This document shows positions 16,941-46,300 of a DNA stretch of 64,000 bases, piece by piece (the first letter of the stretch is position 1; each line of letters starts with the position of its first letter). The notes under the pieces are model-generated. The model searched no databases. It was given only the letters and a program-made list of their open reading frames with translations, and was not told the DNA's origin. The DNA comes from Kudoa neothunni (lineage: Eukaryota; Animalia; Cnidaria): NCBI GenBank assembly GCA_964304625.1, contig OZ199840.1, positions 7,943,744 to 8,007,743 on the forward strand, read 5' to 3'. The translations under genes were made by a program, and so were the position numbers.

Positions 16941-17498
16941 CACTAGATATTTTATTGATGTTTTTATCCATTTTCTTTTATGAAACAAGATATATATAAT
17001 ATTAAAAATGACAAAAATATTAATGTCAAGTTATTATAACATCAAATCATCGATTTAATGAATTTTATTGTAATATGTGCAATCTAATTAGTGACAAAAA
17101 AACTCGTCAAAACAATTTCAGAAAATTTTTTCCTTTAATTTTGATTAAAATTTCATATTCTCTTTAAAAAATTAGAGGAAAATTATGTAATGAAAATCAA
17201 CATCAAGCATTTTTAGCTATAAATGCAAAATTTCATTAATTATACAACAGAAATAATTTAAATAAAAATTAAGTTATTCTAATTTTAGTCCCCTTATGGG
17301 ATTTAGGTGCAATTTAAACTATACTACTTTTCGAATTATAATAGAAATAGACTTGATACCATTTATAGAGAAAATAATCAGACTGTCGCATATTATTATT
17401 ATTAATTCAAACAAAATTCAATTTCTATCTATCATTGTACTAGCAACAAGTGATTTGATTGTATATATCACCCAGCTGTAATACCGCCATCCTATTGG

Positions 17499-19070
17499 TT
17501 AACAGCATACAATTGGGCATTTGCTAAGACATTCAGTGGAGTTGCAATAGTCTGGACATTTTGCTTGACCTCTAACAATTGCTTGTTCCATCTCTTCGGA
17601 TTTTGGCGGGGAAATGTTATCCTTTGGTTTGTCAGTAGAAGAGGAATTTTCATTGTTATTAGATGCTGACACAGGGCAACACTCTGAACGACATATTGCA
17701 CTGCATTGTTGACCATAGCTTGCACACTCAGGAGGACAATTTAAATTTTGCGGTTGTTGCGTCATACCTGGACTTGGCATGTTCGAGTTTTGATTTGATG
17801 ACATTGATGGGTCACAGCATGCTGCCGGGCACGCGGAATCGTTATTACAATTTGGAGAATTACATTGGGGTGGACAAGCCGTATTCAACAATCCTGCCTA
17901 CAAGAAAAACTTAGTTTTCTACCACCAAAAAATCCTTGTTCTTACAGCTGTATCAAGGAAGGTTTTCAAAGATTGTAAAGAACAACACGAAGGATCACAC
18001 ATTGAATTACAGGATGGATTATTGTTACAATAATCTGGACATTGAGGCTGGATGATTTTACAATAGGATCTACTCAAAATCAAAATACTGGCATGGAGTT
18101 GATTCCAGTTTGAGGAGATTGCATCATAGGAGGAGGATTCATCGGTGCGCTTGGCAGAAGAGGCGGTTCATCTGAAATCGGTACAGGGGCTGTCATCGAG
18201 AAATGACCTTCACAGCATTGTGGGGTACATGATGGCGCACAACTCTGAGAGCATGGATTAGGACAAGCCAATGTCCAACTATGAATTGTTCAATCGTAAT
18301 GACAACAATCTTAAGCGCTACCTTCCTGTAGGCACCATATTTGATGGTCTTCTCGTGGTTGTTATTGGATATGCTGGTTGAGGTGTAGTTGTTATCTGGT
18401 CCATCTCGTAGTCTTCTTCAATGGGAGTAACATCTGGTTCATCTTGATTGTCATTGGCTTCGTGTTTACTCTTCGTTTTGGTTATTTTTCCTCGATGTTC
18501 ATCTTTTTATAATAGTTTTATAAAAATTGAGTATTTGATAATCCTACCACTAGAACTAGAATCTTCAGATTCACTCTCTTTGTCATCGGACTCCTCTTCA
18601 GAATTATCATTGTTAGAACTCTCCTCTGAATCCGAGGATTCTAATAATAAATATTCGATTCGAAATAATAAGATACACTTATAGTACCTTCTTCTGGGGA
18701 TTCAGTTACGGGTTCTTCTTCATTATTTGTTTCTATTTGTTTTTTAATTCAGAAAAGTCAAAAAATCACACCTTCTTCTGCGACTTCATGTCGAGTAGAA
18801 TCAGTGTTGGAGTTGTTTTCTTCACTTTCACCTATTCCACAACATACAAACATTGTTTTGTATGATATTTACCTTCATCCGCATCGGGGCTCACGGTTGT
18901 TGTCTTATGATTCTCATTCTTGATCTTTTCTAAATTCTAGTGAATTAAGTCACATTTCTATTTGTACGTTTAGTTGGTCCTTTTTTATTGTTTAGTGTTT
19001 TCAGATCGATAGCATGAAGTAAAATCAGATACAATGTAAAACAAAAAATCAGTCTTTTATGTTGAAACAT
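17499..19070 (-). CDS. Secreted collagen-less nematocyst/polar-capsule protein: signal peptide + acidic Ser/Glu/Asp region + five minicollagen-type CRDs (409 aa, 9 exons)
   Basis: Exons 19070-18968, 18929-18873, 18831-18772, 18732-18688, 18640-18548, 18502-18322, 18278-18089, 18047-17946, 17897-17499 join in frame through GT-AG introns (1230 nt). N-terminus MFQHKRLIFCFTLYLILLHA. CRDs: CPNPCSQSCAPSCTPQCC, CPDYCNNNPSCNSMCDPSCC, CPPQCNSPNCNNDSACPAACC, CPPECASYGQQCSAICRSECC, CPDYCNSTECLSKCPIVCC*. Confidence 0.85.
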
Positions 19071-19934
19071 TTTATTTAACCCTCTCATGGGTATGTAAGA
19101 AAAGGAAGGAACAACGTCTCTAGGATTTCAACAAGTAGTAATTGAAATAAACTTGTCACCTACGTAAAAGGACGCAGTTTGTCTTTCAAGGAGATATTCA
19201 CAGTTTATTCAATATTTAATTAAATAAGATAATGAAATAAGGACATTCTTACTAGATATATCAATTATAACTATCTATGGATTTTAATGCATATTCGAAG
19301 ACAACCCTTGGGGTATTCTTTATAAATTTCGGAAACTAATACAATATCTATAATTAATGAAAACAGAATTAACATATTTTTTAAATAAGTCAGCAGTTTG
19401 AGCTTGTATATAAAAACTTATGTAGTTGCTGTAATATTAAAATATGATATCTAGTTATTTAGGTTAATTTTGGGAGAATAAATTAAATTTTCATCACAGG
19501 ATAGTCATATTTAAAAAAATAGCTAAAGTCAAGATATAATCAAAATTATTCATCATTTTAAAATACAATTAAGAGATACTATAAAAATGCATACAATATT
19601 TAAGACCAAATTTATTATTACAATTAAGTATACTTCAGCGTAAATATGGAGATTACATAGTAAAAGCAATTCCGAGATGGAAAATTAATAAAACAAGCCT
19701 CCTAACACCATCGGGAATCAATAATACACAGTTAAACGCAAAAGAAACTATACTATGAAAGAAGTTTTAAAATAATTAAAAGAATGACATATAAAGTTAC
19801 CTAGAACTCGCTATTCGTACACAAAAACCCGAAACTGCACAAAAACACACAATGAATGAACCTACTATAATGTCCCTAATAGTAAGAAAAATGATAAAGC
19901 TACTATAAAATTTTTATTGAAATCTATTGACTGC

Positions 19935-20575
19935 TTAATGCTTATAGCAGCATGTTGGGTGGCAAGATGTAGTGCAACTTTTTGTGCATATATAAGGACA
20001 TGGTGGAGGTGGTGGTGGGGGAGCAGGGGCACCTGGCAATCCTGGTGGGCCGGGTGGTCCAGGTGGTCCTGGAAGTCCTGGTTGCCCCATATTTCCTCTT
20101 GGTCCCATTGGTCCCTATTTATAGAACAAGCAATGAGATTATTTAACGAAGAAACGCAAAAAATGTTGGAAATGGAATGAAATAATTACTGAAACTCCGT
20201 TTGGTCCGGCTGGTCCAGCAGCTGCTCCTGGTTGACCTGGTGCACCGGCACCGCCAGGCAGTCCCATTGGTCCTGGGGGTCCAGGAGGTCCTGGTGGTCC
20301 TTGCGGTCCTGGTTGTCCAATTGGTCCTGGTGATCCTTGAGGTCCTGGTGGAGGTGGAGGAAGAGGAGCTGCACAACAAACTGGTGTACATAGTGGAGCG
20401 CATATTGCCGGACATCCATAATCACATACTTGAGGACTTCTTTTTTCTAAAAAATAATTTTTGGCTTCAATAAATTTTCGATTCTGCAACCAATAAGATT
20501 ACCCTTCAATCTTGGAAGCGATGCGAAAGTATATGAGATCAAGCAAGCAAGAATGGGGAGGGTGAACATAACCAT
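19935..20575 (-). CDS. Ncol-1: Minicollagen, Ncol-1 type (169 aa, 3 exons)
   Basis: Exons 20575-20503, 20446-20190, 20114-19935. Signal peptide [20 protein letters not shown] propeptide site, [22 protein letters not shown], polyPro, 14+13 Gly-X-Y triplets broken by one Ala, polyPro, [25 protein letters not shown]. Confidence 0.93.
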
Positions 20576-20847
20576 TTTCCTAAATTGTATGCGCTTGGTG
20601 TCAAGTCCGCTTAAAAGTTATGTAAATAAAAATTGTGAGAATCCTTAAACGTAGACGAATGCAAGCACAATAATTTGGAGCGTCTTTACATTCAAATGTT
20701 ATTATCTACATGGTTATGGTGCAAGTTTGGCAATTGTTTTCAAATCTCTAGTGGTTATATTTAATTTTGTTATTAGAGTAATTGAAATGTTGGATACATT
20801 CTACAGGGTGTTGATTTCCATTTAAATTGGTTGACGCAAAGTAGCAA
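20576..20847. promoter_or_regulatory. Putative bidirectional promoter between divergent minicollagen genes
   Basis: Only 272 bp separate the two divergent ATGs (20575 on minus, 20848 on plus). Confidence 0.65.
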
Positions 20848-21596
20848 ATGGAAAAACATCTGAAATATTTTTTCATTTTGTATATATGTTTTAGAAACAC
20901 CTTAGGATTAGGTAAAATGATTAATTACAATTTTTTTATTCAATTTTTCGAACAGATAGACGATCTCCTCAGTTATGTGGTTATGGCTGTCCATCTAGTT
21001 GTCATCCGATGTGCCTTCCATCGTGTTGTACCGCGGGGGGACCTTCTTCAAGTGCTGTATTGGTTTCTGGTCCACAAGGACCACCTGGACCTCCAGGGCC
21101 ACCAGGAATCCCAGCTCCACCTCCATTACCGCCTCCCCCTCCGCTACCGGCTCCAGCAGCAACATCATGCCCTCCCATCTGTATAACAACCTGCATTAAA
21201 AGTTGTCCCCTAAAGTGTTGTGCTCCCCCAGCTCCCCCTGCACCAACTCCTGTGTTGCCACCATGCAATCCTATTCAGTGTACCCAAGTTATGCCGAACG
21301 TCTGCAACCCTTCGTCATGTATACCTCCTCCAATGCCAATTGTTTCTCCTACTCCTATTGTGATGTGTGGAGCAAGACCGTGTGTTCCACCACCACCACC
21401 ACCACCTCCACCTCCACCTCCTCCCCCAAATTCTGCGTGTATTACGTACTTATGTGAACCACAACCAGTTGCATCCCCGCCACCACCTCCACCCCCTCCT
21501 CCTCCGCAGCCAGTACCTTGTAATCCATGCCCAATTCCAATAAAACCGATATGTTCGCCTCAAGGATGTATAAGCCCTCCAAATATTTGCTGCTAA
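20848..21596 (+). CDS. Ncol-4: Atypical minicollagen, Ncol-4-like (234 aa, 2 exons)
   Basis: Exon 1 20848-20911 (MEKHLKYFFILYICFRNTLGL), 44-nt intron 20912-20955, then DRRSPQ-LCGYGCPSSCHPMCLPSCC, only 5 Gly-X-Y triplets, polyPro, CPPICITTCIKSCPLKCC, and a long Pro/Cys tail ending in CC*. The minicollagen call is firm; the Ncol-4 label is from recalled architecture. Confidence 0.8.
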
Positions 21597-23040
21597 TTTT
21601 TTGGAGACTTTACTTAGTGAAAACTAGATCCGTATATTATGGTTTTAAATGAACTCAATCTATATTTTGTATGTGGTGATATTATACCATAACTTTGTTG
21701 GCTACCAATATTATAATGCTAATTGTGCCTTCATTCAAGAAATTCTGTTTTGCATCATAAAGTAATAACTTTGTAATAATAGATTTTGGCTCATATGAAA
21801 ATCTATTTTAAATAAGTTTCCCAATTTTTTTAAAATGATAACGTAAAACTTATATATTTTTATTTTTATTAAAAATCAGCTATCAAAAATAAGACAAAAA
21901 TATTTTTCAAATGTGTGTTCTCTACATTTTTTAATTTTTATTCAACTAATAAATATATCATCATGCAATTATAATGATTATTATTATCAAAATTTATTTA
22001 TTTATTATACAATCGTAAAATGATAAAGGCAGAATCAAATTTATTATTCATGAACACATCTATTCGGTATATTTCAATTTCATGGATACATTTTAGATTT
22101 TTATAATTTCTTGTATGAGAAAATGTTCCATTATCTATAATGTATAACTTTTTTAAACAATAAAATTCTGTGAATACTTATAAAAAAGAATAAATGAAAT
22201 TTAAAATATAGTTAAAAGCTATAATGTAATGATTTTTTGTTTAAACAAATCCGTTATGAAGAATTTTAATTAATTCAACTGCGATCTTCCTTACCGTTGA
22301 ATTTTTAAATTTTAAGTTTCTATTGATCCCATCAAATTAATCCCTTGTGTGCAATTTTGACTATAATTGCTTGTGTCCTATTACTCCGCCTTAAAGGATC
22401 TGGAATAATTTAATATAAAGTGTGTGTAAGAAATAAACTTTTTCTAGCGCATGAAAATGAGAGCTGCGTAGATTTATAATTGATATTGCGTACGCGCAAA
22501 TTACTTTAGGAATAAATAAGTATCCACAAATAAAAACGGTTATGTAAACAAACGGTAAAACGTAATAAATGCAATTATTGATTTAAAACTAATTTATTAT
22601 GAACAAAATATTGTATGTAAAGTAAAAATTTTCGTCTATTTATGTAAGGATTCTAAAAGGATTGATATAACTATGTTTTAAATAAATTATATTCTATGGA
22701 TTTTAAAAATAATTTTACAGTTAATATAAGATTTTTTGTAAGTAAACTATTATCCAATTCGGTTACTACAAGATCAGCTCAATCAAAATAATAAAAAATT
22801 GATAACATACGATAAATGGATTCAGTAAAATAAATGTCTACATTAAAACGAAAATATTACATTTATAATTAAAGTCCACGCAAGCGAAAAAAGTTTTTCT
22901 TGATATTCGAGTATACCATTTGGTTTCTAATAGCTATAATCATTTTTATATAATTAATATAAAAAAATTTGTAATAAAAATTGGGGTTAAACTACAGTTT
23001 GTAATTGTAATGGTGTACAGTCGTAATCGTTCACGTTTAA

Positions 23041-24264: not shown

Positions 24265-27200
24265 ATGGATTTATTTGAAGAGAAAACAGAGCGTTTAATT
24301 ATCTCTCACATTGTGAATGAAAATTTTAAGTCATTCGCAGGGATTCGAAAGTTAGGTCCATTTCACAAATCGTTTACATCGATAGTTGGTCCGAATGGGA
24401 GTGGAAAGTCGAATGTGATCGATTCCATATTGTTCGTTTTTGGATACAGATCTAGTAAAATAAGATCGAAAAAGTTGTCTCATTTGATTCACAAATCTGA
24501 AAATCACACCGAATGTAAACAATGCACAGTGTCCATTCATTTTTCGAAGATTGATGAGGCCAACAACGATGAAGTTTTGGATAGTTTTGTGATATCAAGA
24601 ACCGCACGCGTTGATAACACCAGCGATTATTATATCAACCACACTAAACGAATAACATTCAAGGAAATCCAACAGCTGTTGTTGTCTTATGAGATAGACG
24701 TTGAACACAATAGATTTTTGATTTTGCAGGGTGAAGTTGAACAGATTTCGTTGATGAAACCAAAAGCGGCCAACGAACATGATGATGGTATATTGGAGTA
24801 TCTTGAGGATATAATCGGTAGCAACAAGTTTATCGAACCAATCAACACAATAAAAGGTCAAATGGAAGAGTTAAATGATTTGCGCGCGGAAAAGTACAAT
24901 CGTGTGAAAGTGACTGAGAAAGAGAAAACCAGCTTAGAACCGGCTAGAAAGAAAGCGCTGGAGTATGTGGACAAGGAGAAGGAAAGAAATCGTATCAAGT
25001 CGCTGATTCTACTTGGCAAAATTAGTCAAATTGAGCAAGACAATGATAAATTGCTCACCAAGAAAACCACTCTAGACGAGCAACTTTCTCAGGTGACCGG
25101 CAGCAAAGAGAATTATGAGGGTGAATTAGCCCAAATCAACAGCCGTATAGACAATATCACAAGCGAATTGGATCCGTTGTCCAAAACAACCGATCAACTT
25201 AAACGCAAAATAGTACAGCTGGAAAAAGATCATACCAAACAACTCCAAGAAGAGAAATATCTGAATGATCGGGTGGAAGAGTTGGAAGTGGAGATCAAGG
25301 AGGCAATCGATAAAAAGACCGAACTTTCCAACAGTTACGATAAGATCAATGAAACACTAGACACTTTGAACAGCTCTAAAGATAAGTTACAGGAGGAGTT
25401 AAGACAGTACGAGGAAACCTACAACACATTGATGATTGATGTGAAAAAAAGCACAAAGGATCTCACCAAAGAGAAAGCAGAGTTGGATGAGGTTATTCTA
25501 AAGAAGAATGAAGAGGTCAATAAAATTCAACAAGAGATTGACAACCTTAAGTGTGAAGTTGAAGAGTTGAGGTCGAATGAAAAAAATGTGATGGCACAGA
25601 TCAAACAACGTGAAGCCCAGATTAAATCTATTGACCAGTTCCTAAGAGAGAAGTAATTTTGCTATGATATTGCTAGTGTATGGATTGTATAGTGAAAACA
25701 ACGACAAACTGAAACAGATTGAAGCCGAAAAACAACAGCTTGATGATTTCAAACAACAATTGGAACAAATTAAAGCAGATGAAGCTAATTTGGTTGCAAC
25801 CTACAAAGAAAAACACAGCTCATTCGAGAGTATTAAAGCGCAGAGAAACAGCTCCAAATTCAAAAACAAAATAATTGAATCGTTGCTAAAAGCTCAAAGC
25901 AAAGGGGAGATTAAAGGGATTTTTGGAAGAATGGGCGATCTTGCATACATTCCTCCCCAATATGATTGTGCTGTTAGTACTGCTTTCCCCTCGTTGGACA
26001 ATGTACTTGTGGAGAATATTGATGTAGCCAGAAATTGTGTGGAATTTCTCCGAAGTAACAACCTAGGAACATCCACTTTCATCTGTCTTGATAAAATGAA
26101 AACATGGCGTTCCCGAGTGGAACAAACAAAGTCAAACTTTTCAACGTATTCCTTTGATGTTGTGGAATTTATAAATATTGAAATTTATTTTTAGGCCCAA
26201 CAACGTTCCACGATTGTTCGATTTGATTGAGTTGGTCGATCGCAAATTCGAAACAGCCTTCTATTTCATCATGAGAGATACTTTGGTAGCTAAATCAATG
26301 GAGGAAGCCACTTCTATCGCTTTTCAGGTTGAATCTTAATAAAAATGATCGAACCGAGATCATTTTCTAACTTGTTTTTATTAATTTAGAAGAAACAACG
26401 ATGGAGAGTGGTAACTTTGGCTGGAGAATTGGTCGAAAAGTCAGGCACAATGAGTGGTGGTGGCTCCCGTAAAACCACTGGACGAATGTTAACCACCCAT
26501 GACAAAAATAACAACAAACAGGGAAAGGGCAGAAATCCAAGAAGACTTAGTGACCTAGATGTGCACAAAATGGAAATCGAAATCAACTCACTCAAATCTC
26601 AAATCACTGATATAAAGGCTGAAAAGTCTAGATTGATCTCATCGGTTGATTCACTCGCAAAATCAATACCCAAACAAGAAACCAATCTACAGAAAATCTA
26701 TATGGAGATTGATGCATCCAAGAATGAGTTGGTTGAATTGAGAGATCAACTGGAAAAGCTGTCTGTTGAACTTGAACGAGCGAAACCAGATCAACAAAGT
26801 ATGGATCAACTCAAGAACACTATCGCTAAGAAGAATCAACTTTTCGACAAAGCCAATACATCGCTGGAAAAAGTCAAATCAAAAGCGGGTGCTGTTAATG
26901 ATCAGATCGCCACTATTTCCAACAAAATTCTTCAACAAGTTCAGTTTAAAATCAACTCAGTTTCTAGACTCATCGAACAAGTTTCCTCTGAAATCTCGAA
27001 GAATAATGCTATTATCTCCAACAACAAAAAACAGGACGACAAACTTCAAAAAACTCTCCAGGATTTAAACAAAGAACACTCCAAATGTGATCAAAAGTTG
27101 AAAGTGATCTTACGAAAAAAATCACAGAACAATAACATCGACAATCAAACTACCATACTGTATGAGGACCAACTGGCTGATATGAAGCAACAACTCGGCG

Positions 27201-28297
27201 ATAGTGAACAAACGCTCGAACAACACAAACTCAACCTAGCTCAACTTCAAAATACCGCCACTAATCTACAAACCGAAATAGAACAGCAGAAAATTAAAAT
27301 CGTCGATACGCGCAATGATTTGGATAAAATTTCTTCTCAATGTTCCATTGCCACGCATCAAATTGCTTCCATACAAAAAGAATTAGAGCAATTGAATATT
27401 GCTCATGAAGATGTTGCAGATTGGCAACAACATGTCTCGTCTGCACATCTGCTTCATGATCAACTGGCCGATTTGGATCAGTATCTTAAAACTAATCAAG
27501 TCAATCTACAAGTTATTGATGAGTACAACAGTAAAATGTCTATCTACATGGAACGAGTCGCAGAACTTGAAGAAATCACACAACAACGAGATAAATATCG
27601 TGTCGAATTGGATGCTTTGTACAAGGAACGTTTGAATTCGTTTATGGATGGATTCGCTGTGATCAACTCCAAACTCAAAGAATTCTACCGATTAATCACT
27701 CTTGGTGGAGATGCCGAATTGGAATTTGTTGATAGTTTAGATCCCTTTGTAGAAGGTGTTGTCTTTAGGTAGGGCGAAGAATAATGAAGAAATTATTGCG
27801 TTGTTCATTCAAATGTTTTTTTATTAATGTTGTATTTTTAGTGTGAGACCACCAAATAAAAGTTGGAAGGTAATCGGTAATTTGTCCGGCGGAGAAAAAA
27901 CTCTGAGTTCGCTTGCATTGGTAATCTTTTCACCTACGCTAAAAGCGATGCTACTATTTGTGTCTAACATGGTTGGTTGTATAGGTGTTTGCACTACACT
28001 ACTATAGACCATCTCCTTTTTATGTTATGGATGAAATTGATGCTGCGCTTGATTTCAAAAATGTTTCCATTATAGCGAATTACATCAAGGTTAGAATTGT
28101 CTTATAATGATTCTTTCTTCCGTTAGAATGTAATTGTGTCGTTTCTGTAGGAACGTACAAAAAATGCCCAATTCATTATTATAAGTCTTCGTAACAATAT
28201 GTTCGAACTGGCAAACGTTCTTGTGGGAATTTATAAGACGGATAATTGTACAAAGTCGATTGCAGTGGATCCCTTTAAAATGATCACTATTGAATGA
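24265..28297 (+). CDS. SMC4: Structural maintenance of chromosomes protein 4 (condensin), multi-exon
   Basis: ENFKSFAG...[24 protein letters not shown] (Walker A), hinge [86 protein letters not shown]. Stop at 28295-28297. Confidence 0.97.
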
Positions 28298-43331: not shown

Positions 43332-46300
43332 GGCTGTGTCTATTTTGCCGGACGCGCTTTTTCTCTTAAAATAATAATTCAATCGCTACAATTTTTTCCT
43401 AAAAATATCTTTTATAAATGCAGAATATAAATTTAGTTTCATTAATTCAGTGACGAATTTTAACATAGCTAATTTGTATCCATAATATCCACATGAAAAT
43501 ACAGTAAAGTAAAACTATTTGGCCAATTCGTATTTAAAATTTTTATAATTAGGTAAATTTTTTTATCAGATGATTGATACACCACTAAAATTTAATAAAA
43601 TGTTGAGTATTCTACTTTAAATAATAAATGTTTGAAATTATCTTGTATTGCAACGCCAAATAATTGTGACTGTTTAACTTCCACATAAAATTATATTTGA
43701 ATATAATATATCGATATTGGTGTTGTTATTATTACTACTATCATCATTACCATAATTATAATTTTCTTTTTTTTCTTAAACCAATAACTGTTTGAAATAC
43801 ACCTTTTGGTCTACCTCTCAATTTCACTACTGTTGGCAGCTTAATTCCTATAATTTTATGAATTTAGCAAAATGGACAAAAGATACACACCCTTCAATGA
43901 TGGATTTTTAGTTGTGGTATCATCTACAATATTCGGGATCTCCATATCAATTATTGATGATGGAACATTATCATTAACTGCTTCTAGTATATCCTCATTC
44001 TCTAATCGTGATTCCTCAGTAACTAAACACGAAATAAAAATTCTACTAAAGACAATATCATTAATTACATGTTGGGATTGAAATCTCTTGATTGTTTATG
44101 ATGACAGATTCAGACATTAACTTGAACTAAATTAAGTTGATATATGAATAGTGGAAAAAATAGTCACCTTATCCAGAGAATCCCCATTGGAAATAAGAGA
44201 GATTAATTCACCTAAAATCTTTTTTAATGAATCATATTGACTCCCTGTTTTTTCAGACCCTAGCGAAGCTATTTTCTTACAAAGAATTTCTAGCTCCCTG
44301 TATCGCCTAAAAGCAGAATTCGGAACAGGGCACTGACTCGAAATTTCTGTAATACTTGGTTGCACACAACACGAAGGATTTTGAAGATATAAATTTTTGT
44401 TCATTTGAATAAATGACAGGTAATATTCTTTGTGCCACCTCTTATTACAAATTTTCTCTTCATATAAATTCATGTTCATTATTTTTCTAGCGTAAATAAT
44501 ATGCCTACATGGTGACTCCATACTTACGTAGAAACAACATGTACAACTATTGGGATCAGGATTGGCATAGGATTCGATATGATTATTTATTTCATCTTGC
44601 ATAATATTATACGCATATGAAGTCAACAATGTTTTATATTGTTCGTTAATGTCTGAATTTAATTTCTCAACAGTTTGGGTTGTCCACTCTCTAACTGCTT
44701 TATTCTCACGCTCAGTCCTCATACTTGATAGATAAATAAATAAGCAGATCGCTGAAAAAGACTTCAATTGTTGAGAATTTTTTTATGATTTGTTTAATTT
44801 TGGAATTTATGCATTCTAATCGATTATTTGTTCTATTTAAAAAAGTACCCTTTAGGTTCATGTATGCCGGGCACCATTCATGTTTGATTGGATCCCAAGA
44901 TTTATTATAATAAGTAATGATTTTTTTGTTACATGTATTATTTAACAATTCATGGTAATTTTCATAAATTTTTGGATCATTGGTATAGCAAAGCTTTTGA
45001 ATCAACTCTAAGGCAGTTTTTCTTTCGGCTTTGTTTATTCCCATTCTTAATGTAGAGATTTCTCTCCCAAATGTTCTTAAGACATGGTACAGGCATAAGT
45101 TTGTACTTACGTTAGGAAATATAGATCTTATAGAGTTTCTTTCAATCATGTCTTTATCCGTAATGAAACAAACTGTTTTGGTTGACATTTCCTCGTTATG
45201 TTTAAGTAGAGACTGACATAACCAGGTAACAGCCACGGTACTCTCCTCAGATAAAAGAGCAATAGCTCCTATTTGACTTTGCCCAAATGAATCGATAAAC
45301 AGACATATATACAATGGCATACGATTATTGATTAATTTATAAGTGGCATCCATAAATACTAGTTCGGGAAATTTTTTAATAACGTTTTTCATATAAAGGT
45401 CTTGGAAAAATATTCCAGTCATTTCATTGGAGTTATTGTGCAATATTTCGATAGTTGCATTTGGGTGAGAATTTTTTATTGAATTAAACAATTCCGAAAT
45501 ATCCGACGAAACATTTTTTTTCAATGTTTGGATATAATTATGGATTTGCTTCAACGAAACCTTTTTTTGTGATTGGTTCATGATTTCTACTTGTACTCTT
45601 TTTAAATTTCCATCATAAAAATGAACATTTTTTATAAGATTCTTGCTTTCTTCATCTAATTTTCTATTCATTGGTAAAAAATCCCTAAAATGCTCATTTC
45701 TGTTGCAGCTGTGAGTAAGATCCAATTTTCTAATAACTAACATATTCATGTTTTTAGGAACTCGCAGTGTAATGAAGAAATTGCAACCACTTTTATGGCT
45801 GTTGATTTTTCTCTTCCCAGCACTTTTAGATTGTATCTGAATTCAAATTAATTACATCAATTTTTATATAGATAATTACATTTTTACCACCATGAACACA
45901 ACAAAAAGTGGCTTCATAATAAACAAGATCAGAGTTCATGTCTCTATCAAATTTTTTTAGGGCAGTTGAGATTTTTCTAGAGTCTCGGACCCAGTAACAA
46001 AAGTTGTTCCGCTTTGAGTACTTATCCATGAATTCTTTAGCCTTTTCAAAGTTTGTAAATGCATTTCCGACCATAGGTTCAGATGTAATATCCTGAATTA
46101 GTAGTGTTTGATCAGACTCTCCTTCCATAGTGATTCTACTCGCGACTATCAAAGTTACAACCGCACGCTAGAGGGTATTTTACTCGTTTATGCTGTTATA
46201 ACACATAAAATTAGATTAATTGTATAAATAATACAGATTTATAAAAATTTAATGTCATTTATAATGAAACTTATGAATGAGTTTAAAATATCCTCAATGT

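What the first reader, a model, noticed from the sequence alone, without database searches (positions are those of the whole stretch)
17499..19070. Collagen-less five-CRD secreted protein beside the minicollagens: candidate new polar-capsule structural protein
Seen: a clean 9-exon, 409-aa model that the ORF track misses as a unit. It has a signal peptide, a long acidic/Ser/Thr-rich low-complexity N-half, and five six-cysteine CRDs ending in CC, with no Gly-X-Y. Known: such CRDs cross-link nematocyst walls by disulfide exchange in minicollagens, NOWA, cnidoin and CPP-1. This protein lacks NOWA's SCP and C-type lectin domains and cnidoin's Gly/Gln elastic repeats. Inference: a multivalent disulfide cross-linker or scaffold for the capsule wall or tubule. 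I do not recognise the architecture as a named protein.
Basis: partly seen in the sequence, partly recalled or inferred. Interest (0 to 1): 0.85.

Follow-up and report, generated by a model that had tools for sequence, protein, structure and literature searches.

The report
Collagen-less five-CRD polar capsule protein
This is a real, intron-rich gene of a myxozoan parasite for a secreted protein with five minicollagen-type cysteine knots and no collagen; its counterpart was already detected, unnamed, in purified stinging capsules of Ceratonova shasta, so it is a conserved but uncharacterised building block of the capsule.

Summary
A minus-strand gene of 9 exons (19070..17499) gives an open 409-aa frame. 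All introns are GT-AG, 38-48 nt, and AT-rich compared with the exons. The protein has a signal-like N-terminus, a strongly acidic Ser/Thr-rich half (net charge -29), five six-cysteine CRDs and no Gly-X-Y. It ends in CC-stop. It lies about 850 bp downstream of a head-to-head Ncol-1-like/Ncol-4-like minicollagen pair, an arrangement published for Myxozoa.

The main new result comes from Table S1 of the Ceratonova shasta polar-capsule proteome (PMC5566210). It lists an unnamed "Unknown" protein, TRINITY_DN3120_c1_g1_i1, found in all three capsule preparations. It matches 29 of 32 residues across the predicted exon 6/7 junction and CRD1. It also has five CRDs in the same order, with loop insertions in the same places and a CC-stop end. 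The polar-capsule location is therefore supported by published proteomics. The novelty claim is weakened, because the family was seen before but never named or studied.

Disulfide cross-linking into the capsule wall or tubule is still an inference. No RNA from this organism could be laid, and sequence databases gave no other homologue. The scan's other notes on this stretch are first-reader notes, not follow-ups.

The parts
17499..19070 (-).
   Evidence: Frame, GT-AG introns of 38-48 nt and a single terminal stop. Exon GC is 41% against 26% for introns, and every intron carries a stop if retained.
19071..19088 (-). Possible 6-codon N-terminal extension from an upstream in-frame ATG at 19088 (MRGLNK-)
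   Evidence: The ORF list shows the ATG at 19088 in frame with 19070. Which ATG is used was not resolved.
18968..19070 (-). Exon 1: signal-peptide-like N-terminus. It has a basic n-region, a hydrophobic core at residues 8-18 and a small-residue motif (L-H-A) at about residue 20
   Evidence: The protein's maximum Kyte-Doolittle hydropathy (2.75) is at residues 8-18. The sequence was read. SignalP was not available.
18873..18929 (-). Exon 2 (57 nt, phase 1-1), acidic region
18772..18831 (-). Exon 3 (60 nt, phase 1-1), acidic region
18688..18732 (-). Exon 4 (45 nt, phase 1-1), acidic region
18548..18640 (-). Exon 5 (93 nt, phase 1-1), Ser/Glu/Asp-rich with many S-x-E/D motifs
   Evidence: 10 S-x-[ED] motifs in residues 25-184
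18322..18502 (-). Exon 6: end of the acidic region and a Thr/Pro-rich stretch. It ends in ..VPTG and the first two bases of a Ser codon
   Evidence: The junction peptide VPTG-S-WTLAC is contiguous in the C. shasta transcript-derived protein.
18348..18353 (-). Arg-Arg (residues 170-171), 14 residues before the first CRD cysteine. It is a candidate proprotein-convertase site
   Evidence: Dibasic site list. The C. shasta ortholog has Arg-Lys 10 residues before its CRD1. The neighbouring minicollagens have KR/RR just before their N-CRDs. Cleavage is inferred, not shown.
18089..18278 (-). Exon 7: CRD1 plus a Pro-rich linker
   Evidence: This exon finds only NOWA CRD structures in the PDB.
18212..18265 (-). 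CRD1, canonical CX3CX3CX3CX3CC (CPNPCSQSCAPSCTPQCC)
   Evidence: It is 16/18 identical to C. shasta CRD1.
17946..18047 (-). Exon 8: CRD2 and part of linker 2
17982..18041 (-). CRD2, spacing 3-5-3-3-0
   Evidence: The N-CRD of Hydra CPP-1 has the same spacing class.
17499..17897 (-). Exon 9: CRD3, CRD4, CRD5 with Ser/Asn/Pro/Gln-rich linkers, then the stop codon (17499-17501)
17814..17876 (-). CRD3, spacing 3-4-5-3-0
17676..17738 (-). CRD4, spacing 3-6-3-3-0, identical to the spacing of C. shasta CRD4
17502..17558 (-). CRD5, spacing 3-4-3-3-0, C-terminal (CC-stop), identical to the spacing of C. shasta CRD5
19935..20575 (-). Context: Ncol-1-like minicollagen directly upstream on the same strand. 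It has a signal peptide, a KR propeptide end, an N-CRD, polyPro, a long Gly-X-Y stretch split by one intron, polyPro and a C-CRD
   Evidence: Pfam Collagen hit. Marine cnidarian minicollagens were found as homologues.
20848..21596 (+). Context: Ncol-4-like minicollagen with 5 Gly-X-Y repeats and a long Cys/Pro-rich C-terminal extension. It lies head-to-head with the Ncol-1-like gene, with 272 bp between the start codons
   Evidence: It matches the published Ncol-4 description and the Ncol-1/Ncol-4 juxtaposition with 208-326 bp spacers (PMC7981951).

Best explanation
The gene encodes a secreted structural protein of the myxozoan polar capsule (the parasite's nematocyst). The signal peptide takes it into the ER-Golgi route that feeds the capsule primordium. 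Each of its five minicollagen-type CRDs first folds with internal disulfides. During capsule maturation these disulfides are exchanged for intermolecular ones with CRDs of minicollagens (such as the Ncol-1-like and Ncol-4-like proteins encoded next door) and of other CRD proteins. With five CRDs strung on flexible Pro/Ser/Asn/Gln-rich linkers, one chain could act as a multivalent node in the wall or tubule polymer. It would contribute no collagen rod. The long acidic, S-x-E-rich N-half has two possible fates. It may be an oversized acidic propeptide removed at the conserved dibasic site just before CRD1, as in minicollagens. Or it may be retained as a cation-binding or glycosylated domain. What is shown: the gene structure, the CRD homology, the genomic linkage to minicollagens, and the presence of the ortholog in purified C. 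shasta polar capsules. What is inferred: secretion, disulfide cross-linking, valency and the fate of the N-half.
For: Gene model and composition. CRD pattern against chance. CRD homology: hhalign of the five CRDs against eight minicollagen CRDs gave 93% probability and E 3e-7. CRD1 found only NOWA CRD NMR structures in the PDB. A profile of the window's nine CRDs hit NOWA 2nx7 (E 0.0014) and Hydra minicollagen-1 1zpx (E 0.0044). Ortholog in the capsule proteome: TRINITY_DN3120_c1_g1_i1 is 29/32 identical over VPTGSWTLAC..HFS. It has five collinear CRDs with loop insertions in the same loops and a CC-stop end. It gave 18/14, 15/12 and 6/5 spectra/unique peptides in three capsule preparations. 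The authors noted cysteine-rich orphans with a likely structural role. CRD-mediated disulfide polymerisation is established experimentally for Hydra minicollagens, NOWA, CPP-1 and cnidoin. The same capsule proteome contains a sulfhydryl oxidase and proprotein-convertase domains, the enzymes such a pathway needs. The gene is in tandem with the Ncol-1/Ncol-4 pair.
Against: There is no expression or splicing evidence from this organism. The three RNA runs under the same species label laid 0-2 reads, so they do not contain it. No signal-peptide predictor was available. Four of the five CRDs have non-canonical loop lengths, and their fold and reactivity are untested. The five-CRD-only profile reaches only E of about 2 against PDB CRDs. 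The AlphaFold model of exon 9 was uninformative (pLDDT 50). Capsule preparations in the proteome paper also contained histones and ribosomal proteins, so detection there is strong but not absolute evidence of location. The comparison with C. shasta was made by eye on text returned by a tool, not by a computed alignment.
Confidence: 0.65

Rival explanations
1. It is a capsule or tubule surface protein whose main job is not mechanical cross-linking. The CRDs would only anchor a heavily O-glycosylated or phosphorylated, mucin-like or cation-binding N-half. That domain could serve host attachment, tubule stickiness or contraction, or ion storage for discharge.
For: The N-half is long (about 160 aa), has net charge -29, is Ser/Thr/Pro-rich and has 10 S-x-[ED] motifs. 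The C. shasta ortholog has Thr/Pro/Val/Asn/Gln-rich tandem repeats in the same position. By the determinants in PMC4863159, CRD1 looks like the monovalent N-CRD/NOWA type: no Val/Ile at position 4 and no Pro at position 14.
Against: The N-half sequence is not conserved between the two species. A dibasic site just before CRD1 is conserved, which fits removal as a propeptide. Five CRDs are more than an anchor needs.
Confidence: 0.2
2. It is a secreted cysteine-rich protein that acts outside the polar capsule, for example in the spore valve or suture matrix, or as a host-interaction factor. On this reading it co-purified with capsules in the C. shasta study.
For: The capsule proteome also contained obvious non-capsular proteins such as histones and ribosomal and cytoskeletal proteins. 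There is no localisation data for this protein.
Against: The CX3C..CC domain is so far known only from nematocyst proteins, and it matches them here. The gene lies next to two minicollagen genes. The ortholog was found in all three capsule preparations with up to 14 unique peptides.
Confidence: 0.08
3. The model is partly wrong or the gene is decaying. On this reading only the CRD exons (7-9) are real, and the acidic micro-exons and signal exon were stitched together by chance.
For: There are no RNA reads for this organism. Exons 2-5 are very short (45-93 nt). The N-half has no detectable homologue and is not alignable to the partial C. shasta N-terminus.
Against: All eight introns are GT-AG and fall in a narrow 38-48 nt range. 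All carry stops if retained, and they are 15 points lower in GC than the exons. Exons 2-5 keep one phase (1-1). The exon 6/7 junction product is exactly what the C. shasta transcript encodes. The first exon supplies the protein's only hydrophobic signal-like segment.
Confidence: 0.05

Closest known systems
Ceratonova shasta polar-capsule proteome entry TRINITY_DN3120_c1_g1_i1 ('Unknown', no BLAST hit; Piriatinskiy et al. 2017, PMC5566210, Table S1)
   Same: It is 29/32 identical across ..VPTGSWTLAC-CRD1-..HFS. It has five CRDs in the same order. CRD1, CRD4 and CRD5 have identical Cys spacing, and CRD2 and CRD3 differ by one residue in the same loops. A conserved L-K-x-F motif follows CRD2. There is a dibasic site shortly before CRD1, a Thr/Pro-rich stretch upstream, and the protein ends in CC-stop. 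There is no Gly-X-Y.
   Different: It comes from a different species. The linkers and CRDs 2-5 are much diverged, and linker lengths differ (43/19/25/39 aa here against about 24/18/14/30). The C. shasta sequence is 5'-partial. Its visible N-part is a T/P/V/N/Q tandem repeat rather than the acidic Ser/Glu-rich sequence here. Its genomic neighbourhood is unknown.
NOWA (nematocyst outer wall antigen, Hydra)
   Same: It is a collagen-less nematocyst wall protein with a C-terminal series of minicollagen-type CRDs that join the disulfide-linked wall polymer. CRD1 here finds only NOWA CRD structures in the PDB.
   Different: NOWA has an N-terminal SCP/CAP domain, a C-type lectin domain and eight CRDs. 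Here Pfam finds no domain in any exon, there are five CRDs, and the N-half is acidic low-complexity sequence. None of the three CAP-domain loci of this genome has a CRD within 1.5 kb.
CPP-1 and cnidoin (Hydra capsule wall proteins)
   Same: They are collagen-less proteins integrated into the capsule wall through CRDs. The N-CRD of CPP-1 has the same non-canonical 3-5-3-3-0 spacing as CRD2 here.
   Different: CPP-1 is a continuous polyproline rod flanked by terminal CRDs. Cnidoin is a Gly/Gln silk-like elastomer flanked by CRDs. The present protein has neither core. Its CRDs are strung internally along the C-terminal half.
Myxozoan minicollagens Ncol-1 to Ncol-5
   Same: [quoted passage not shown] The gene is physically adjacent to Ncol-1-like and Ncol-4-like genes.
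   Different: It has no Gly-X-Y triple-helix segment and no long polyproline flanks, so it fails the defining minicollagen feature.

Membership tests
Minicollagen-type cysteine-rich domain (CRD) proteins of nematocysts | Six cysteines in the pattern CX3CX3CX3CX3CC | tested here: met
   CRD1 is canonical. CRDs 2-5 keep all six Cys and the terminal CC but have 1-3 extra residues in loop 2 and/or loop 3. Such variants are published for CPP-1 and for Ncol-4 and Ncol-5.
Minicollagen-type cysteine-rich domain (CRD) proteins of nematocysts | Sequence similarity to established CRDs beyond the cysteines | tested here: met
   hhalign of the five-CRD profile against a profile of eight minicollagen CRDs gave probability 93% and E 3e-7. 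The PDB hits of CRD1 are all NOWA CRDs, at E 0.06-4.8. The five-CRD profile alone against the PDB is only suggestive, at E of about 2.
Minicollagen-type cysteine-rich domain (CRD) proteins of nematocysts | CRD fold with three disulfides and intermolecular disulfide exchange | not testable with these tools
   The AlphaFold2 single-sequence model of exon 9 had mean pLDDT 50. This needs NMR or biochemistry.
Minicollagen (Ncol) | Central Gly-X-Y collagen triple-helix sequence flanked by polyproline and terminal CRDs | tested here: not met
   There is no run of three or more Gly-X-Y in the 409-aa model. No exon has a Pfam Collagen hit, whereas the neighbouring gene has one.
NOWA | SCP/CAP domain and C-type lectin domain N-terminal to the CRD array | tested here: not met
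   A Pfam scan of exons 1, 6, 7, 8 and 9 found no family at E up to 1. Exons 2-5 are 15-31 aa of acidic low-complexity sequence and cannot hold such domains.
Cnidoin | Gly/Gln-rich silk-like elastic domain between the CRDs | tested here: not met
   Gly is not among the eight commonest residues in either half. The N-half is rich in E/S/T/N/P/D and the C-half in P/S/C/N/A/Q.
CPP-1 | Continuous polyproline stretch flanked by one N- and one C-terminal CRD | tested here: not met
   There are five CRDs. The longest Pro run is PPP, in linker 1.
Ortholog group of C. shasta TRINITY_DN3120_c1_g1_i1 (unnamed polar-capsule protein) | Collinear five-CRD array with the conserved VPTGSWTLAC lead-in and a CC-stop end | tested here: met
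   The comparison was made by eye between and the sequence printed. It shows 29/32 identity over the lead-in plus CRD1, matching loop-insertion positions in CRDs 2-5, and the same C-terminus.
Ortholog group of C. shasta TRINITY_DN3120_c1_g1_i1 (unnamed polar-capsule protein) | Presence in polar capsules | not tested
   This is shown only for the C. shasta protein, in three capsule preparations. There is no data for this organism.

The most novel reading that the evidence does not exclude
This gene and the C. shasta orphan may define a conserved, Myxozoa-wide family of collagen-less penta-CRD capsule proteins that is genomically linked to the Ncol-1/Ncol-4 pair. The family may have arisen from a minicollagen by loss of the collagen rod and multiplication of CRDs. 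On this reading it takes over the multivalent, NOWA-like node function in a lineage that lacks a canonical NOWA. Its giant acidic S-x-E-rich N-half would be a new kind of nematocyst propeptide or cation-binding matrix domain.
Probability: 0.3. Interest if true: 0.6.

Novelty: new member of a known kind. Interest (0 to 1): 0.45.

Why it matters
Polar capsules are the infection organelles of myxozoans, which include serious fish pathogens. Their wall chemistry is known almost only through minicollagens and nematogalectins. This work links an anonymous proteome entry of C. shasta, reported as having no homologue in any myxozoan or cnidarian database, to a full gene in a second myxozoan. That gives the family a complete architecture, an exon structure and a genomic address beside Ncol-1/Ncol-4. 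Together with at least two other collagen-less CRD genes in this genome and three more in the C. shasta capsule proteome, it suggests that CRD-only proteins are a regular component of the polar capsule. The family is now a concrete target for antibodies, reducing versus non-reducing gels and recombinant polymerisation assays. The advance is incremental, not surprising: CRD-bearing collagen-less wall proteins are well established in Hydra.

Tried and rejected
RNA support: the look-up of sequencing runs found only four DNA runs of one study holding the stretch. Three RNA raw-read runs with the same species label laid 0, 2 and 0 reads. The two reads lay on Gly-X-Y sequence of the neighbouring genes. 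This is no test of expression or splicing.

Homology searches were done exon by exon. phmmer of exon 9 against 1.84 billion representatives gave one hit, a 7339-aa Thr/Val/Ala-rich protein without any CRD. It is a compositional artefact. The search for homologous proteins with exon 9 and with exon 7 found nothing, but its length window excludes full-length relatives. The ESM Atlas gave no usable hit. Pfam found nothing in five exons.

Own-genome searches with exons 9 and 7 returned only the gene itself.

A genome-wide CRD census by DNA pattern failed.

The AlphaFold2 model of exon 9 had pLDDT 50, so no fold search was run.

A motif search in the supplements of the Myxobolus capsule proteome paper PMC8773148 found no occurrence.

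The species could not be identified through the Ncol-1-like exon. Only distant marine cnidarian minicollagens were returned.

The joined, spliced protein was assembled only inside local scripts, to check frame, length and composition. It was never sent to a search, fold or database tool.
Full report
**What is in the sequence**

The finding lies on the minus strand. I read 19150-17400 in reverse complement and fixed the exon ends at unique landmark strings. My first attempt used wrong ends for intron 1 and intron 7 and gave nine internal stops.

- There are nine exons: 19070-18968, 18929-18873, 18831-18772, 18732-18688, 18640-18548, 18502-18322, 18278-18089, 18047-17946 and 17897-17499.
- The CDS is 1230 nt and encodes 409 aa, with one stop, at the end.
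- All eight introns start GT and end AG, and they are 38-48 nt long.
- Every intron would introduce an in-frame stop if retained.
- Exon GC is 41.3%, against 26.3% for introns and 26.7% for flanking DNA.
- Exons 2-5 are 45-93 nt, each a multiple of three, and all in phase 1-1. This agrees with the scan's separate note on these micro-exons.
- An in-frame ATG six codons upstream (19088) is an alternative start.

**The protein**

- The only strongly hydrophobic segment is at residues 8-18. A basic n-region precedes it and L-H-A follows it. This is a signal-peptide-like start. No predictor was available.
- Residues 25-184 have net charge -29. They are dominated by Glu, Ser, Thr, Asn, Pro and Asp and contain ten S-x-[ED] motifs.
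- The C-terminal 225 residues contain 30 cysteines in five blocks. Their spacings are 3-3-3-3-0, 3-5-3-3-0, 3-4-5-3-0, 3-6-3-3-0 and 3-4-3-3-0. The last block ends the protein.
- The linkers are 43, 19, 25 and 39 residues long.
- There is no run of three Gly-X-Y and no Pfam family in any exon tested.

**Is it more than chance?**

The relaxed CRD pattern occurs nine times in all six frames of the 64-kb window. Five are in this gene and four are in the two adjacent minicollagen genes. It occurred zero times in 40 shuffles of the window. I also kept all 30 Cys and shuffled the residues of the C-terminal half 5000 times. That gave at most one match, against five observed.

**Surroundings**

Directly upstream on the same strand, at 20575-19935, lies an Ncol-1-like minicollagen. 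Its parts are a signal peptide, a propeptide ending in KR, an N-CRD, polyPro, a long Gly-X-Y region split by one intron, polyPro and a C-CRD.

Head-to-head with it lies an Ncol-4-like gene at 20848-21596. The two start codons are 272 bp apart. It has five Gly-X-Y repeats and a long Cys/Pro-rich C-terminal extension.

Kyslik et al. 2021 (PMC7981951) describe this Ncol-1/Ncol-4 juxtaposition in eight myxozoan species, six from genome assemblies and two by PCR, with spacers of 208-326 bp. Several further points place the window in a myxozoan:

- the tiny introns;
- about 30% GC;
- the C. shasta ortholog described below.

I could not name the species. The genome assembly is 40.3 Mb in four contigs. 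In the DNA run that holds the stretch, the contig has depth 3.4. Unrelated collagen-like contigs in the same run have depth 25-30. The organism is therefore a minor component of that sample.

**Are the domains minicollagen-type CRDs?**

- The CRD1 exon finds only NOWA CRD NMR entries in the PDB: 2hm3, 2hm4/2hm5, 2hm6 and 2nx6. E-values are 0.06-4.8, and all six Cys align.
- A profile of the window's nine CRDs hits NOWA 2nx7 (E 0.0014) and Hydra minicollagen-1 1zpx (E 0.0044).
- The profile of this gene's five CRDs alone is only suggestive against the PDB, at E of about 2 with NOWA on top.
- Profile against profile is clearer. The five CRDs were compared with eight CRDs taken from two marine cnidarian minicollagens and the two neighbouring genes. 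That gave 93% probability and E 3e-7 over 20 columns.
- All five CRDs begin C-P.
- Tursch et al. 2016 name fold determinants for CRDs: Val/Ile at position 4 and Pro at position 14 favour the multivalent C-CRD fold. By these, CRD1 (..CAPSCTPQCC) resembles the monovalent N-CRD/NOWA type. CRD3 and CRD5 carry Pro directly after the fourth Cys. The loop insertions prevent any firm assignment, so this point is inference.

**The key external evidence**

[quoted passage not shown] 2017, PMC5566210) lists TRINITY_DN3120_c1_g1_i1 under "Unknown". It is 278 aa, 5'-partial, and had no BLAST hit and no InterPro match. It gave 18/14, 15/12 and 6/5 spectra/unique peptides in the three capsule samples.

Its printed sequence contains ..VPTGSWTLACPNPCSQECAPSCTPSCCESHFS... 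The window gene encodes ..VPTGSWTLACPNPCSQSCAPSCTPQCCEGHFS.. across the predicted exon 6/7 junction. That is 29 of 32 identical.

Downstream, the C. shasta protein has four more CRDs, with spacings 3-4-3-3, 3-4-6-3, 3-6-3-3 and 3-4-3-3. The spacing is identical to the window gene's for CRD1, CRD4 and CRD5. For CRD2 and CRD3 it differs by one residue, in the same loops.

The two proteins share three further features:

- an L-K-x-F motif after CRD2;
- a dibasic site shortly before CRD1 (RK at -10, against RR at -14 here);
- a CC-stop end.

I made this comparison by eye.

The match has three consequences:

- It validates the exon 6/7 splice product and the collinearity of exons 7-9 against an RNA-derived sequence from another species.
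- It places the family physically in purified polar capsules.
- It shows that the family has been seen before, but only as an anonymous orphan.

The paper's text says only that several orphans were cysteine-rich with short proline-rich stretches and might be structural. Later myxozoan minicollagen, nematocyst-gene and proteome papers that I checked do not name such a protein.

**Other homology searches**

The gene is single-copy in its own genome at the sensitivity of the tool.

The class, however, is not unique:

- Following two scan notes, I found another collagen-less gene with three canonical CRDs at about C3:4.851 Mb, and a single-CRD ORF at about C3:7.756 Mb.
- The C. shasta capsule proteome holds at least three further collagen-less CRD orphans: DN3403, DN13795 and DN2762.
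- No NOWA-like architecture was seen. The three CAP-domain loci of this genome have no CRD within 1.5 kb. This is a limited test.

**Mechanism**

I consider this the most likely course of events. The protein enters the secretory route to the capsule primordium. Its CRDs then exchange internal for intermolecular disulfides with CRDs of minicollagens and other capsule proteins during wall or tubule maturation. This has been shown experimentally for Hydra minicollagens, NOWA, CPP-1 and cnidoin.

Five CRDs on flexible linkers would make the protein a multivalent node. The enzymes for such chemistry and for dibasic processing are present in the same C. shasta capsule proteome: a sulfhydryl oxidase and proprotein-convertase domains.

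The acidic N-half is either a very long propeptide removed at RR170-171 or a retained cation-binding or glycosylated domain. I cannot decide between these.

Shown: the gene structure, the CRD homology, the linkage to minicollagens, and the ortholog in capsules. Inferred: secretion, cross-linking, valency, processing, and wall versus tubule location.

**Verdict**

The novelty is reduced. This is a new, full-length member of the known kind "CRD-bearing collagen-less nematocyst structural proteins". It is the first recognised ortholog of an unnamed C. shasta polar-capsule protein. I give it moderate interest of 0.45.

**Limits of the work**

The spliced protein was joined only inside local scripts, to check frame, length and composition. 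It was not sent to any search or folding tool.

Noticed in passing
L004:1310-1975 (G000:C3, about 4,851,310-4,851,975), plus strand: This is another collagen-less CRD gene in the same genome. It has three canonical CX3CX3CX3CX3CC domains (CGPYC.., CPFDC.., CSFDC..) in two open segments, with no Gly-X-Y between them. It corresponds to scan note s1-687458.
   Followed up: partly
L003:739-795 (G000:C3, about 7,756,140), plus strand: A single CRD-like block (spacing 3-4-3-3-0) lies in a short open segment near the place of scan note s1-690152, which describes a collagen-free protein with one CRD. I did not build a gene model.
   Followed up: partly
window 20848-21596 (+): The Ncol-4-like gene continues after its C-CRD into about 120 residues of Cys/Pro-rich sequence, including a run of 16 prolines (at about 21383-21427). 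It ends in ..NICC-stop. This fits the published 'C-terminal CRD interrupted by polyproline' of Ncol-4.
   Followed up: partly
window 18688-18929 (-): Exons 2, 3 and 4 all end in ..GA(T/A)GAAG|GT and are phase 1-1. This suggests the acidic region grew by exon duplication. Skipping any of exons 2-5 would keep the reading frame.
   Followed up: no
window 24265-27772 (+): Three long ORFs carry SMC_N, AAA_23 and SMC hinge domains. They form an SMC-family chromosome maintenance gene with few introns, about 3 kb from the capsule gene cluster.
   Followed up: no
window 44132-45749 (-): Overlapping ORFs carry MULE transposase, ZSWIM1-3 RNaseH-like and SWIM zinc-finger domains. This is a Mutator-like transposase gene or a domesticated derivative.
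   Followed up: no
window 17300-21700 in run X1: The contig that carries this locus has k-mer depth 3.4. Short Gly-X-Y matches come from other contigs at depth 25-30. The sequenced sample therefore holds this organism as a minor component beside a more abundant one, probably the host. RNA runs under the same species label do not contain it.
   Followed up: partly
PMC5566210 Table S1: The C. shasta capsule proteome holds at least three more collagen-less orphans with minicollagen-type CRDs: TRINITY_DN3403 (four CRD-like blocks), DN13795 (two; similar to T. kitauei RF11_01650) and DN2762 (similar to RF11_06209). CRD-only proteins may be a regular class in polar capsules.
   Followed up: partly
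P0001: phmmer gave E 5e-26 between exon 9 and a 7339-aa Thr/Val/Ala-rich protein that has no CRD motif. This is a compositional artefact and a warning for low-complexity queries.
   Followed up: yes
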